From Anolis carolinensis (taxonomy: Eukaryota): 64,000 bases of DNA. Shown here one piece after another: positions 39,227-45,969 of the stretch. The stretch is from positions 7,803,802 through 7,867,801 of the forward strand of contig NW_026943825.1 in NCBI RefSeq assembly GCF_035594765.1, read 5' to 3'. The notes beneath the pieces were generated by a model. The model saw only the letters and a list, made by a program, of their open reading frames with translations. It did no database searches and was not told where the DNA came from. The stretch's first letter is position 1, and each line of letters opens with the position of its first letter. The position numbers and the translations under genes are program-made.

Positions 39227-40069
39227 ATGTCCATCCCGGCATCGCTGTTCCTGGTGGTGGTTTGGACCGTCTACCCCCGGGGCTCGTCCCCCACCAGCAT
39301 GGGACACCCTCTGCCCACTCCGCTCAAGGAGAACCACGTCTTCCCTTCGGCCCCAGCACCGCATGGAGAAGAGGCCTCCATGTCTACACCGCTCAAGGTG
39401 TATCTGGATGACGACTACGACTACGACGATGACAACGTCCAGACCGAACGGGTCCCATCCCCGATGCCTCCGCGCTGCAACTACAGCCACTGCCACCACC
39501 TCCAAGTCCCGTGCGCCGAGTTGAGCAAGGCCAGCCGGTGCTTGTGCCCGGGGATCACGGGCCCGTTGGTGGCCCCGGAGGCCCCCCGCTTGCAGACCGT
39601 CCACGTCAGCGAAGCCGGGGCCAGCTTGCATTGGTGTGCCCCGTCTTCCATCGTGGAAGCCTACCAGTTGCAGTACCAACTAATCGGCGACAACGACGAC
39701 GTCCACGTCGGACCCGCTCTTGGCAGCACTTTCCGCATGGCGTCCATTTCGGGTTTGTTGCCCAACCGGGAGTATCTCTTCTGTGTGGTGGCTTTTAACC
39801 TGGTTGGCGCCAGCCCGACCGACGACGGCTTCCAGGAACGTGGACCATGTCGTCTCGTCCGGACTCCTTCCCGACAGACGTCCTACGCTTACGTCGCCGT
39901 CGGCGTGGCTTGCACCCTCATCGTCGCGGTCGTCTCCGTCTTGGCTTGGTATTTTTGCCACCGCAGGAGGAAATATTCTCACCACGGCTCGTTGCACAAC
40001 ATCCTGGACGGCGGGTTGGGTATCACCGGGGCAGCCAACAGCTCTTTCCAAAGCGAGGAGCAGCTGTGA
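39227..40069 (+). CDS. LRRN4CL: LRRN4 C-terminal-like protein, 280 aa (signal peptide, Cys-rich region, FN3, TM, short tail)
   Basis: CNYSHCHHLQVPC..L...CLCPG, LHWCAPSS and REYLFCVVAFNLVGAS FN3 motifs; TM YVAVGVACTLIVAVVSVLAW; acceptor at 39221 just before the ATG; position between BSCL2 and UBXN1. Confidence 0.9.
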   Translation: MSIPASLFLVVVWTVYPRGSSPTSMGHPLPTPLKENHVFPSAPAPHGEEASMSTPLKVYLDDDYDYDDDNVQTERVPSPMPPRCNYSHCHHLQVPCAELSKASRCLCPGITGPLVAPEAPRLQTVHVSEAGASLHWCAPSSIVEAYQLQYQLIGDNDDVHVGPALGSTFRMASISGLLPNREYLFCVVAFNLVGASPTDDGFQERGPCRLVRTPSRQTSYAYVAVGVACTLIVAVVSVLAWYFCHRRRKYSHHGSLHNILDGGLGITGAANSSFQSEEQL

Positions 40070-40144: not shown

Positions 40145-41200
40145 CAGTCTAACAGCTGAGTTACCTGTGTGCCATTACATCAGAGGTTCTCCACTTTCCT
40201 AATGCTGCGACCCCTTGATATGGTTCCTCATGTTGTAGTGACCCCCAACCATAAATTTATTTTACGGTTTTTCAGTCTAACAGCTGAGTTACCTGTGTGC
40301 CATTACACCAGTGGTTCTTAACCTTCCTCTACTGAAGAAATTCCAGGAAGCAGGTCGAGTCTAAACTCTTTCAAGAAAACCAACTATATGTTGTATACGT
40401 TTTCTAGGTATCATTTTGTATTTTCAATCTTGAAGACATCTTGTTTATGGCTTTGAACCCTTGATACGGTTCCTCATGTTGTGTTGACCCCCAACCATAA
40501 AATTATTTTATGGTTTTTCAGTCTAACAGCTGAGTTACCTGTGTGCTATTACATCAGTGGTTCTCCACCTTCCTAATGCCGTGACCCCTTCGCACGGTTC
40601 CTCATGTTGTGGTGACCCCCAACCATACATTTATTTTACGGTTTTTCAGTCTAATAGCTGAGTTACCCGTGTGCCATTACATCAGTGCTTCTCAACCTTC
40701 CTTCATCAGTGCTTCTCAACCCCTTGGCTCAGTTCCTCATGTTGTGGTGACCCCATCCATAAAATTATTTTATGTTTTTCAGTCTAACAGCTGAGTTACC
40801 TGTGTGCCATTACATTAGTGGTTCTTAATCTTCCTAATGCCACGACCCCTTGATACGGTTCCTCATGTTGTGGTGACCCCCAACCATAAAATTATTTTAG
40901 GGTTTTTCAGTCTAACAGCTGAGTTACCTGTGTGCCATTACATATGTGATGACCCCCAACCATGAAATTATTTTACGGTTTTCAGTCTAACAGCTGAGTT
41001 ACCCGTGTGCCATTACATCAGTGCTTCTCAACCTTCCTAATGCCATGACCCCTTGACACAGTTCCTCATGCTGTGCTGACCCCCTACCCTAAAATTGTTT
41101 TCGTTTCTACTTCACAACTGTCATTTTGCTCCCGTCATGAATTGCAAATCGTAAATATCCGATAAATATCCGAATTGCAAATCGTAAATATTCGATATGT
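40145..41200. repeat. Tandem amplification (~125 bp units) of a SPIN/URR1-like hAT terminus plus flanking sequence
   Basis: CAGTGGTTCTCAACCTTCCTAATGCC..GACCCCTT..GTTCCTCATGTTGTGGTGACCCCCAACCATAAAATTATTTT, each preceded by CAGTCTAACAGCTGAGTTACC. Confidence 0.75.
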
Positions 41201-41621: not shown

Positions 41622-42621
41622 GTAAAGTTTCCCCCTTAACATTAAGTCCAGTCTCCATGTCTAAGTTGAAGTCATTGTCCATAGACACCTCCAAGGTCAT
41701 GTGGCCACTGGCATGACTGCATGGAGTGCCATTACCTTCCCACCAGAGCAGTATCTATTGATCTACTCACATTGGCATGTTTTCGAACTGCTAGGTTGGC
41801 AGAAGCTGGGGCTAACAGCGGGTGCTCACTCCGCTCCCCGTATTCAAGTTACCGACCTGTCAGTCTGCAAGTTTAGCAGCTTAGCCACCAAGGAAAGACC
41901 GTTACCTTCCCACCGGAGCGGTACCTATTGATCTACTCACATTGGCATGTTTTCGAACTCCTAGGTTGGCAGAAACTGGGGCTAACAGCGGGTGCTCACT
42001 CCGCTCCCTGGATTCAAACCGCCGATCTGTCAGTCTGCAAGTTCAGCAGCTTAGCCACCAAGGAAAGACCGTTACCTTCTCACCAAAGCGGTACCTATTG
42101 ATCTACTCACATTGGCATGTTTTCGAACTCCTAGGTTGGCAGAAACTGGGGCTAACAGCGGGTGCTCACTCCGCTCCCTGGATTCAAACCGCCGATCTGT
42201 CAGTCTGCAAGTTCAGCAGCTTAGCCACCAAGGAAAGACTGTTACCTTCCCACCGGAGCGGTACCTATTGATCTACTCACATTGGCATGTTTTCGAACTC
42301 CTAGGTTGGCAGAAGCTGGGGCTAACAGCGGGTGCTCACTCCGCTCCCCGTGTTCAAACCGCCGACCTGTCAGTCCGCAAGTTCAGCAGCTTAGCCACCA
42401 AGGAAAGACCGTTACCTTCTCACCAAAGCGGTACCTATTGATCTACTCACATTGGCATGTTTTCGAACTCCTAGGTTGGCAGAAACTGGGGCTAACAGCG
42501 GGTGCTCACTCCGCTCCCTGTGTTCAAACCGCCGACCTGTCAGTCCGCAAGTTCAGCAGCTTAGCCACCAAGGAAAGACCGTTACCTTCCCACCGGAGCG
42601 GTAGCTATTGATCTACTCACA
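41622..42621 (-). repeat. Sauria SINE with its 5' part tandemly amplified (170 bp period, about 5 units)
   Basis: ORFs at 41942, 42112 and 42282 recur every 170 bp; SINE tail at ~41625. Confidence 0.85.
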
Positions 42622-42898
42622 TTAATTAATATATGGAACAAAAATAAAACCCCGAACTATGATTGTGTGATCAAGTATTTGCTTTGGTTTCCTACCAAAC
42701 TTTAATGAGCTCTGAAATAGGGCAGCGTTCTCACTCACAAACGGAGTTTCTGTTGGCCGTCAGCCCAGGCTGGGGTCATAAACAGGCCGCCGAGCTGCGA
42801 TCTGAAATTTTTTTTTCCCAGATAGGGTTGGGAACACAAATAAAAATTACTATATCTTGATGCAGTCCTTTCTCTCTTTGTTTCGCACCCTGCCGTGC

Positions 42899-43560
42899 TC
42901 ACACGGTTGTTTCATATTCTGTGACTTCCGCAGGACAAGAGTCCAGACGCTTCTTAAATTGGGTCGCGTCGCGTTGTCCGTCCGAGCCAGGGCCGAGATG
43001 CGGCTGCACCGTGGTGGCGTGGATCCCGTGTTCGCCGAAGACCCGCTGCACGTTGTCGATGACGGCTCGGCACCGGGTCACGTCGAGGCAGCACACGTGG
43101 GCGGTGGCGACCAAGCCGGCGGGACCGTCCAGCTGCCAGACGTGGAAGTCTCTCAGGGCCGTCACGCCTTGGGTGTCACGCAAGTGCCGCTCCAGCTCAC
43201 GGAGGTCCAACCGGTCTGGCACGGCTTGCAGGAGAACCAAGGAGGAACTACGTAAAGTTGGCCACGCAAAGAGCAAGAGGGTGATCGCGACAGCGACGGC
43301 GAGCCCAGGATCCAGGTAACGGAGCCAACACGACACAACTGAACACGCAGGACAGTCGTTGAGGCACGCTGAACGATCCACACACGGAGTCCGTTGTAGC
43401 AGCAAGTGGTACGTCACGGAGTAGAGGAAGACAGCCATCGGACCCAAGCAGGCCGCCATCCCGTCAAGAAGAAGTCGCCCGGCTTTCTTTGCAAACTCAA
43501 CAGGACCGAGCTCGGCCGCCCAGGACTTTCCGCTGCCCGAGGATCCGTTCTGCAACAGGT
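42899..43560 (-). CDS. SLC30A1/ZnT1-like cation diffusion facilitator, exon 2 (TM5-6 and cytosolic CTD)
   Basis: Polypyrimidine-GCAG acceptor, phase 1; motifs CWLRYLDP, SLVLLQAVP, FHVWQL, ATAHV, GIHATTVQP; ends ETTV*. Confidence 0.88.
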
Positions 43561-43786
43561 CTGCGGAGGAGGAAGGAAACAAAGAGCAACTCAGTTGTAT
43601 GGCGATATTCTTACACATCGACATTGTGCGGAAGTAAAAGAGAGAATTCCAGGAGAGCAATAAAACAAGCCTTTTATTGTTATCACAGCTGATGATAAGG
43701 CAAAACAGCCATAGGCACCCACTTTAGTGGGTCCGTACAATGCAAATGGCCCTTGCCACATGTGCGTAGCAAACAAAGAATTTATA

Positions 43787-44437
43787 CCTCTGGCTTATCT
43801 AAAATTGACCAATGGCTGAGGGTCTTCCTCACCTACCACACCTTTGGCTTATCTAAAATTGACCAATGGCTGAGGGTCTTCCTCACCTTCCACACCTTTG
43901 GCTTATCTAAAATTGACCAATGGCTGAGGGTTTTCCTCACCTTCCACACCTTTGGCTTATCTAAAATTGACCAATGGCTGAGGGTCTTCCTCACCTTTCA
44001 CACCTTTGGCTTATCTAAAATTGACCAATGGCTGAGGGTCTTCCTCACCTTCCACACCTTTGGCTTATCTAAAATTGACCAATGGCTGAGGGTCTTCCTC
44101 ACCTTCCACACCTCTGGCTTATCTAAAATTGACCAATGGCTGAGGGTCTTCCTCACCTTCCACACCTTTGGCTTATCTAAAATTGACCAATGGCTGAGGG
44201 TCTTCCTCACCTTCCACACCTCTGGCTTATCTAAAATTGACCGATGGCTGAGGGTTTTCCTCACCTTCCATACCTCTGGCTTATCTAAAATTGACCAATG
44301 GCTGAGGGTCTTCCTCACCTTCCACACCTCTGGCTTATCTAAAATTGACCAATGGCTGAGGGTCTTCCTCACCTTCCACACCTCTGGCTTATCTAAAATT
44401 GACCAATGGCTGAGGGTCTTCCTCACCTTCCACACCT
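43787..44437. repeat. 54 bp minisatellite, 12 units, in the ZnT1-like intron
   Basis: (GGCTTATCTAAAATTGACCAATGGCTGAGGGTCTTCCTCACCTTCCACACCT[T/C]T)x12. Confidence 0.97.
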
Positions 44438-44892
44438 ACTTGGCATAAATGATACCTGTGACCTCACTTGTTTACTCCGAGGCACCTAATTTTATCACAA
44501 AAAACTGGGAAAATATTGACTCCAGTATAAGCCGAGGGTGGTAAATTTCAGAAATAAAAATAGATACCAATAAAATTACATTAATTGACGCATTGGTAGG
44601 TTAAATGTTTTTGAATATTTACATCAAGCTCAAATTTAAGATAAGACTCTCCAACACTGATCCAATCAATATTCTCATCTTCTTCTTCAATGTAAATGTC
44701 CTTATGTATCCTTTTAATAATAATACAGGGAAATAATACATGTAATAATAATAATAATAATAAATACAGGAAAATAATACATGTAATAATAAATAGAGTA
44801 GAATAATAAATTACATTCAATATATGGTTGATACACCTTCATCATTATAAATGCATGCAATAACATGAATATCGTTAAAGTCTATAACGTAC

Positions 44893-45412
44893 CTTCCATC
44901 TCCTGGGTGCAACCATCTCCTTGGGCGAGTCTCCTCCTTCTGCGACAGGGCTTCAGACCCACATCTTGGAAATGCCTCTTGTTCAGGCACGCTCGGACCA
45001 GGTGGACAAGGATGCCCATGGCCCCCACGCCCATCAGGACCACGGTGTGCTCGGTGAGCCGTGGTGCCACCACCCTGAGGACCGCTTCAGGGACGAGCGC
45101 CAAGCACAAGGAGCTTTGGAACATGGAGCTGAGCAGCGTGCCCAGGACTCGCACCCGGGCCCCTCCGAAGGAGTCCCGTTGGACGAGGCCCCGTCCGGAG
45201 GACACGTAGGAGTCGGCCAAGGCCACCGCCAGGCCCAGGGCTCCCCCCAAGGTGTGGAAAGCGGAGGAGAGCAGCAGCAGGGACCCCGTCGCCCGACTGG
45301 CCACGATCTCCGCCAAGAAGAAAGCCAACAAGACGCAAAGCTGGACCACGACGGTCAAGCGAGTGACCCCATCCACAACTGAGCGGGGCTTCTTTCGTAG
45401 GTGGGCTCCCAT
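44893..45412 (-). CDS. SLC30A1/ZnT1-like cation diffusion facilitator, exon 1 (TM1-4)
   Basis: ATG at 45412 (MGAHLRKK); EIVASRATGSL, SFGGARVRVLGTL and EAVLR align to ZnT1 EVVVSRVTSSL, TFGWIRAEVMGAL and EAIER; donor GAAG|GTACGT, phase 1; the spliced CDS is 1182 nt (393 aa). Confidence 0.88.
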
Positions 45413-45602: not shown

Positions 45603-45627
45603 TGCACTCGAAGCCGGCCCTGCGCAC
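45603..45627. promoter_or_regulatory. Two metal-response elements (MTF-1 core TGCRCNC)
   Basis: TGCACTC 45603-45609 and TGCGCAC 45621-45627, about 200 bp upstream of the ZnT1-like ATG. Confidence 0.55.
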
Positions 45628-45969
45628 TGCCACTTGGGCTCCTTTAAAGCGGCAGCTCCGTTGCTTGGCTCCATGCCCGGGCTCCAGCCAGCTGCAGAAA
45701 AAAGGACATCATTATGCATCTAATTACCCTCTTTACACAATAGGAGACGAAAAAATTTCCTAGGCCGAAAGTTCACACGAGGCCAAACTCAAGAGATTTA
45801 TTCCCCATGCACTTCAAACTCTGCCGAGGAGCCCCAAACTTCTTAAAAAATGCCTATCTAGGCTAAAATGCCATGCTAATTTTACACACACACACACATA
45901 TATATAATATACAATAATTTATAAATATATAATATATTGTATATACTTATAATATTGATAATAATATTA

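What the first reader, a model, noticed from the sequence alone, without database searches (positions are those of the whole stretch)
42899..45412. Intact ZnT1-like gene with a dismantled zinc-transport site: candidate pseudo-transporter or altered-substrate CDF
Seen: two exons splice in frame (phase 1) to a 393 aa protein with no stops or frameshifts. By my alignment to ZnT1, TM2 SDSFHMLSD reads SSAFHTLGG (H53 kept, D>G57) and TM5 FLHVLGDALG reads LLDGMAACLG (H>D206, D>A210), so the HD-HD site becomes H-G-D-A. The His-rich TM4-TM5 loop is replaced by a basic RRRRR segment. Retained are the Cys-rich TM5-TM6 loop (a ZnT1 rather than ZnT10 trait), the CTD (HVWQL, ATAH, GIHATTVQP) and a class I PDZ-type tail (ETTV). 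Known: these aspartates are required for ZnT transport; ZnT6 is a non-transporting partner subunit; ZnT1 has CTD-mediated non-transport roles (Ca-channel beta subunit, Raf-1, GluN2A). Inference: a regulatory or dimer-partner subunit or scaffold rather than a Zn exporter.
Basis: partly seen in the sequence, partly recalled or inferred. Interest (0 to 1): 0.85.

Follow-up and report, generated by a model that had tools for sequence, protein, structure and literature searches.

The report
Ancient zinc-transporter twin lacking transport site
Lizards, snakes, turtles, lungfish, bichir, sharks and rays keep an unstudied second copy of the cell's main zinc-export gene that has lost the residues needed to carry zinc but still has zinc-switch DNA in its promoter, so it probably steers or anchors zinc exporters rather than pumping zinc itself.

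Summary
Confirmed. The window is Anolis carolinensis; two exons splice in phase 1 to a 393-aa CDF protein identical to an NCBI model. Site A reads H53/G57/D206/A210. It is no lizard accident or pseudogene: 44 orthologues (squamates, turtles, lungfish, bichir, sharks, rays) are intact, dN/dS is 0.2-0.4, and the gene sits head-to-head with UBXN1 in lizards, turtle and bichir, away from true ZnT1. None of the 44 has a full HD-HD site; D47 is lost in 43. Corrections: D206 occurs in only 3 of 23 squamates, RRRRR is not conserved, and reptiles also lost most cytosolic zinc ligands. New: an ExxxL[LI] sorting-type motif (40/44 versus 1/27 ZnT1) and a pair of metal-response elements before the ATG in 8/8 loci from shark to lizard (background 1.3%). 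Best reading: a zinc-inducible, non-transporting partner of ZnT1-type exporters that controls their sorting or anchoring; loss of normal zinc export is near certain, the partner role is inferred. No paper found. Two first-reader notes on this same window raised the ohnolog and MRE ideas; nothing on other DNA. No splice reads could be laid.

The parts
44893..45412 (-). Coding exon 1 (aa 1-173): TM1-TM4 and first half of the cytosolic loop
43561..44892 (-). Phase-1 GT-AG intron, 1332 nt, holding a 54-bp x 12 tandem array; same position in all 8 orthologous loci
42899..43560 (-). Coding exon 2 (aa 174-393 and stop): TM5, Cys-rich loop, TM6, CTD, tail
45242..45256 (-). TM2 half of site A: H53 (ZnT1 H43) and G57 (ZnT1 D47)
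43451..43465 (-). TM5 half of site A: D206 (ZnT1 H251) and A210 (ZnT1 D255)
43553..44902 (-). ExxxLL acidic-dileucine-type motif, E171 to L176, split by the intron
43325..43396 (-). Extracellular Cys-rich TM5-TM6 loop (about aa 229-252); C233, C246, C251 shared with ZnT1
42995..43222 (-). Cytosolic dimerisation domain (aa 287-362); fold kept, most zinc ligands lost
42902..42913 (-). C-terminal class I PDZ-type motif ETTV
45603..45609 (+). Proximal metal-response element core, reverse to the gene; matches the element upstream of ZnT1
45621..45627 (+). Distal metal-response element core; specific to this lineage, conserved shark to lizard
45643..45648 (-). TATA-like TTTAA(A) box just upstream of the MRE pair, conserved in two anoles, gecko and turtle
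39227..40069 (+). Neighbour: single-exon fn3 gene (LRRN4CL-like), synteny marker
54699..54770 (+). Neighbour: first coding exon of the UBA+UBX gene (UBXN1-like), head-to-head, synteny marker

Best explanation
An ancient paralogue of SLC30A1 (ZnT1), at least as old as jawed vertebrates, that in reptiles no longer carries zinc. Shown: intact frame, purifying selection, CDF fold, loss of three of four site-A ligands plus D40 and E78, loss of the His loop and most CTD zinc ligands, conserved MRE pair, ExxxLL motif and PDZ tail. Inferred: MTF-1 switches it on with ZnT1 when zinc rises; it dimerises through the kept TM3/TM6/CTD/Cys-loop scaffold, with itself or with ZnT1; and its dileucine motif and PDZ tail decide where the dimer goes, so it works as an auxiliary subunit that re-routes, anchors or dampens zinc export. 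I put loss of normal zinc antiport at about 0.9, a non-transport partner role at about 0.6, and ZnT1 as the specific partner at about 0.35.
For: 0 of 44 orthologues keep HD-HD while 27 of 27 ZnT1 do; 35 keep one ligand or none. Replacements vary by lineage (G, M, L, T, A, S at D47; G, R, Q, D at H251), which looks like release from constraint, not a new site. D47A/D255A, H43A/H251A and D40A lose or reduce transport in human ZnT1 (PMC11051671). dN/dS 0.26, bootstrap 0.19-0.35, between two anoles; 0.22 to gecko; 0.26 to turtle. TM6 and CTD are the best-kept parts (58-78%) and TM5 the worst (45-52%); TM3/TM6 are the fixed scaffold in ZnT1 (PMC11549101). MRE pair in 8/8 loci, 7/531 background windows, shuffles 1-20 per 1000; ZnT1 is MTF1-induced (PMC7949119). 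ExxxL[LI] in 40/44 against 1/27. ZnT heterodimers redirect each other's location and ZnT6 is an auxiliary protomer (PMC7949119).
Against: No functional data. No interaction or dimer was modelled. MRE and dileucine motifs are short consensus matches, though conserved. The protein is only about 30% identical to ZnT1, so the interface may no longer fit. E35, H137 and D257 are invariant in 34 reptiles, which a pure scaffold need not keep. Sawfish and devil ray keep three of four ligands. Splicing was not seen in reads.
Confidence: 0.55

Rival explanations
1. It still moves or senses a metal, through a rebuilt site on the outer side of the membrane domain (E35, C/S50, H53, H137, D257), for example as a slow endosomal Zn, Cu or Cd carrier or a zinc sensor.
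For: E35, H137 (ZnT1 N127) and D257 are invariant in 34 reptiles, C50 in 28, E109 in 22 of 23 squamates. E25, D40, E99 and D317 line ZnT1's outer cavity. The promoter stays metal-responsive in sequence. ZnT10 shows that altered sites can switch substrate.
Against: Anolis has S50; all turtles have Q at H43 and mostly R at H251 and E99; sharks and rays have Q, K and D at these places, so no common new site exists. No acidic ligand replaces D47/D255. Mn-type sites need Asp/Asn. TM identity falls to 45-60% where ZnT1 keeps 91-100% in the same species pairs.
Confidence: 0.2
2. It is a zinc-induced membrane scaffold that kept only ZnT1's side jobs (binding the L-type Ca-channel beta subunit, Raf-1, GluN2A or PDZ proteins) and does not pair with ZnT1.
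For: CTD and PDZ tail are kept; ZnT1 binds the Ca-channel beta subunit and Raf-1 (PMC7949119) and has a class I PDZ motif (PMC3975337).
Against: The CTD is only about 45% identical to ZnT1's and reptiles lost its C-terminal extension; partner surfaces were not mapped here. It does not explain the dileucine motif.
Confidence: 0.2
3. It is a decaying duplicate or pseudogene of ZnT1.
For: Fast protein evolution and long branches; no member found in mammals, birds, crocodilians, amphibians or teleosts; splice reads not seen.
Against: Open frames in 44 species over about 450 million years, dN/dS 0.2-0.4, conserved intron, promoter and motifs; 14 probable RNA runs from 5 studies hold 56-74% of the words; a reptile-only duplication of ZnT1 is rejected, p-AU 0.0002.
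Confidence: 0.03

Closest known systems
SLC30A1 / ZnT1
   Same: Two exons with one phase-1 intron in the TM4-TM5 loop, six-TM CDF fold, Cys-rich outer loop, CTD, class I PDZ tail, MRE upstream.
   Different: Separate locus and lineage; about 30% identity; HD-HD, D40, E78, His loop and (in reptiles) CTD zinc ligands lost; ExxxLL motif and a second, lineage-specific MRE gained.
SLC30A6 / ZnT6 (and, from my own knowledge, yeast Zrg17 and plant MTP12)
   Same: CDF protein with hydrophobic residues in place of site-A ligands; auxiliary protomer of a heterodimer (PMC7949119).
   Different: Other subfamily (ZnT5/6/7, Golgi); here the degeneration arose in the ZnT1 subfamily; no partner is shown; the gene carries MREs.
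SLC30A10 / ZnT10
   Same: ZnT1 subfamily member with a changed site A.
   Different: ZnT10 keeps the aspartates and transports Mn; this protein lost them, has the Cys-rich loop, and scores half as well against ZnT10 as against ZnT1 (50 vs 104 bits, 55 vs 75 bits).

Membership tests
CDF / SLC30 family | Cation_efflux domain above Pfam cut-off | tested here: met
   PF01545 59.2 bits, cut-off 26.6
CDF / SLC30 family | Six TM helices plus alpha-beta-beta-alpha-beta CTD | tested here: met
   Model pLDDT 80; Foldseek top hits ZnT1, E 4e-18
SLC30A1 orthologue | Groups with ZnT1 of the same species in a tree | tested here: not met
   Separate clade; Anolis has its own ZnT1 (P0265) on another chromosome; AU test p 0.0002
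SLC30A1 orthologue | HD-HD transport site (H43, D47, H251, D255) | tested here: not met
   H-G-D-A in Anolis; 0 of 44 complete
SLC30A1 orthologue | Cys-rich TM5-TM6 loop and PDZ I tail | tested here: met
SLC30A1 orthologue | CTD zinc sites and His-rich loop | tested here: not met
   H370 lost in 23/23 squamates, Cys cluster absent in reptiles, 1 His in loop
SLC30A10 orthologue | N-D/H-D type Mn site and short TM5-TM6 loop | tested here: not met
   Aspartates lost, Cys loop present, lower scores; no true ZnT10 was available for the tree
ZnT6-type auxiliary subunit | Site-A ligands replaced by non-ligating residues | tested here: met
ZnT6-type auxiliary subunit | No transport alone; obligate heterodimer with an active ZnT | not testable with these tools
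   needs transport assay and co-IP
MTF-1 target gene | Paired TGCRCNC cores in the proximal promoter, conserved | tested here: met
   8/8 loci; background 7/531
MTF-1 target gene | Zinc induction that needs MTF-1 | not testable with these tools
   needs reporter assay or zinc-treated RNA-seq
2R whole-genome-duplication ohnolog of SLC30A1 | Origin at the base of jawed vertebrates or earlier | tested here: met
   Members in sharks, rays, bichir, lungfish, reptiles; UBXN1 synteny bichir to lizard; shared intron site and promoter
2R whole-genome-duplication ohnolog of SLC30A1 | Lies in a block paralogous to the SLC30A1 region | not tested
   From my own knowledge UBXN1 and LRRN4CL are neighbours at human 11q12.3, a region paralogous to 1q32-41; only 10-kb flanks were available

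The most novel reading that the evidence does not exclude
Jawed vertebrates had an extra SLC30 gene, an ohnolog of ZnT1 lost in mammals, that became a zinc-induced dead transporter acting as a trafficking subunit of ZnT1: when zinc rises both are made, and the dead partner sends the heterodimer to endosomes or PDZ scaffolds. It would be the first dedicated auxiliary subunit of the plasma-membrane zinc exporter and a natural separation of ZnT1's transport and non-transport jobs.
Probability: 0.3. Interest if true: 0.8.

Novelty: new variant of a known kind. Interest (0 to 1): 0.62.

Why it matters
It adds an undescribed member to the vertebrate SLC30 family, hidden under the automatic label 'SLC30A1' or 'SLC30A1-like', which wrongly implies zinc antiport. 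It offers a natural transport-dead ZnT1 relative for an open question: which ZnT1 effects (Ca-channel, Raf-1, synaptic) need zinc flux and whether one active protomer is enough in a ZnT1 dimer. Ray, lungfish, bichir and reptile forms keep 3, 2, 2 and 0-1 ligands, a ready series for studying how a transporter becomes a pseudo-transporter.

Tried and rejected
D206 as a new ligand: rejected (3/23 squamates). RRRRR as a functional signal: rejected (not conserved). Reptile-only duplication: rejected (AU test, bichir synteny). Assembly or strain artefact: a second Anolis model differs at 5 residues, none at site A. Shark and ray loci show an H3 gene downstream and no UBXN1 or LRRN4CL within 10 kb, so their orthology rests on tree, intron site, motifs and promoter. 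Arapaima P0059 lies beside TMEM206 and groups with ZnT1, so it was excluded. Ten paper searches found no description of the gene. Three SLC30A10 papers were not held. The bacterial promoter scan and a polyA search were uninformative.

Full report
Identity and observation. The window is from Anolis carolinensis: the exon-2 search returned an identical 393-aa NCBI protein, P0001, on a 17-Mb contig. The two exons join in phase 1 at a GT-AG intron and give 393 aa with one stop. I checked the join in a script; database searches were run exon by exon or with the tool-returned id P0001, never with a typed joined model. Pfam, PDB sequence search and a good AlphaFold model all give a six-helix CDF protein with a cytosolic domain, closest to ZnT1.

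A lineage, not one gene. Searches found 23 squamate and 11 turtle orthologues, 8 from sharks and rays, one from lungfish and one from bichir. The gene lies head-to-head with a UBA+UBX gene (UBXN1-like) in two anoles, painted turtle and bichir, and before an fn3 gene (LRRN4CL-like) in the reptiles. True Anolis ZnT1 is on another chromosome. In the careful tree, reptile, shark and lungfish sequences form a clade (93/88); bichir is unresolved and long-branched, and the lamprey and hagfish sequences fall near the clade, possibly by artefact. Holding reptile copies with reptile ZnT1 is rejected (p-AU 0.0002). All eight loci examined share the intron position inside the ExxxLL motif, whereas ZnT1's intron lies about 15 residues further from the matching segment. 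No true ZnT10 was available for the tree. I found no member in mammals, birds, crocodilians, amphibians or teleosts, but the searches were capped lists, so absence is not shown.

Selection. dN/dS is 0.26 (NG86; bootstrap 0.19-0.35; YN00 0.38) between the two anoles, 0.22 to gecko, 0.26 to turtle and 0.38 (0.29-0.50) between skate and sawfish; the deeper pairs are near saturation. The protein evolves far faster than ZnT1: 45-78% identity by region where ZnT1 keeps 90-100% for the same reptile pairs, with TM6 and the CTD best kept and TM5 worst.

The transport path. All 27 ZnT1 sequences keep HD-HD; none of the 44 does. Thirteen keep no ligand, 22 keep one, 7 keep two, and sawfish and devil ray keep three. 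D47 is lost in 43, D40 in 43. Bichir keeps the TM2 half and most rays keep D255, so the site decayed in steps and partly independently. In human ZnT1, H43A/H251A, D47A/D255A and D47N/D255N abolish efflux and D40A, E78A and N244A reduce it (PMC11051671); Anolis lacks D47, H251, D255, D40 and E78. Reptiles also carry a proline at the S259 position of TM5 (34/34). In the CTD, squamates lost H370 and mostly E420, and reptiles lost the C-terminal cysteine cluster that forms zinc sites in ZnT1 (PMC11549101), while fish members keep it. E35, H137 and D257 are invariant in reptiles, which keeps a rebuilt outer site alive as a rival.

What is kept. (1) An E-x-x-x-L-[LI] motif in an otherwise variable cytosolic loop, in 40 of 44 members and 1 of 27 ZnT1; from established knowledge this is the consensus bound by AP clathrin adaptors. 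(2) A class I PDZ-type tail, mostly ETTV; ZnT1's is ESSL (PMC3975337). (3) Cysteines of the outer loop, which forms part of the ZnT1 dimer interface. (4) Two MRE cores, 16-29 bp apart, reverse to the gene, within 330 bp of the ATG in all eight loci from sevengill shark to anole. In the window as a whole the core is not enriched, but such pairs occur in 7 of 531 background windows and 1-20 of 1000 shuffles. The proximal element matches one upstream of Anolis ZnT1; the distal one is shared only within this lineage, which also supports the orthology of the shark genes. A first-reader note on this window gave the MRE lead; the conservation test is mine.

Expression. Fourteen runs guessed to be RNA, from five studies, hold 56-74% of the sampled words, about the exonic share, and most are far smaller than a genome assembly. 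That suggests transcription but is inference. No human contig was fetched; human ZnT1 numbering comes from PDB alignments and papers.

Mechanism. Most likely a zinc-induced, transport-dead protomer that pairs through the conserved scaffold and sets the location of the dimer through its dileucine motif and PDZ tail. ZnT6 is the precedent for an auxiliary protomer, and ZnT1 is known to change location in heterodimers (PMC7949119). Co-induction with ZnT1 by MTF-1 would put both in the same cells at the same time. Shown are the losses, the conservation and the motifs; induction, dimer partner and sorting are inferred. Rivals are a rebuilt metal site (0.2), a scaffold for ZnT1's non-transport partners (0.2) and a pseudogene (0.03).

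Novelty. Dead CDF subunits are known, so this is a new variant of a known kind. The gene has only automatic labels, and ten searches found no paper on it; subscription journals are not covered. That it is a 2R ohnolog lost in mammals fits its age and my recollection of the human 11q12/1q32 paralogy, but the paralogon was not tested. Interest 0.62.

Noticed in passing
P0331/P0170 (caecilian), P0205 (unnamed Logan contig), P0079 and P0086 (shark): A second group of ZnT1-like proteins with degenerate site A, distinct from this lineage; possibly another ohnolog. Long branches, grouping weak.
   Followed up: partly
L003:10001-11776 (Arapaima gigas, P0059): ZnT1-type duplicate beside TMEM206 with Q at H43 and A at D255: an independent loss of site A in a probable slc30a1b, MREs kept.
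   Followed up: partly
L011 (bichir, P0186): ZnT10-like protein with altered TM2 and TM5 ligands.
   Followed up: no
window:43325-43345 region: A. carolinensis has a deletion of about 12 residues in the outer Cys loop relative to A. sagrei and other reptiles.
   Followed up: no
window:43786-44437; 41732-42623; 40458-41018: Tandem arrays: 54 bp x 12 in the intron, 170 bp x 5 (SINE-like) just downstream of the gene, 128 bp x 4.
   Followed up: no
L002, L004, L008 downstream of the gene: An intron-containing 136-aa histone H3 gene is the downstream neighbour in all three cartilaginous fishes.
   Followed up: no
P0001 versus P0265: NCBI gives this protein the same name as true Anolis ZnT1, 'proton-coupled zinc antiporter SLC30A1'; the label is misleading.
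   Followed up: yes
window:46000-50000: Very AT-rich stretch (GC 19-23%) between this gene and the UBXN1-like gene.
   Followed up: no
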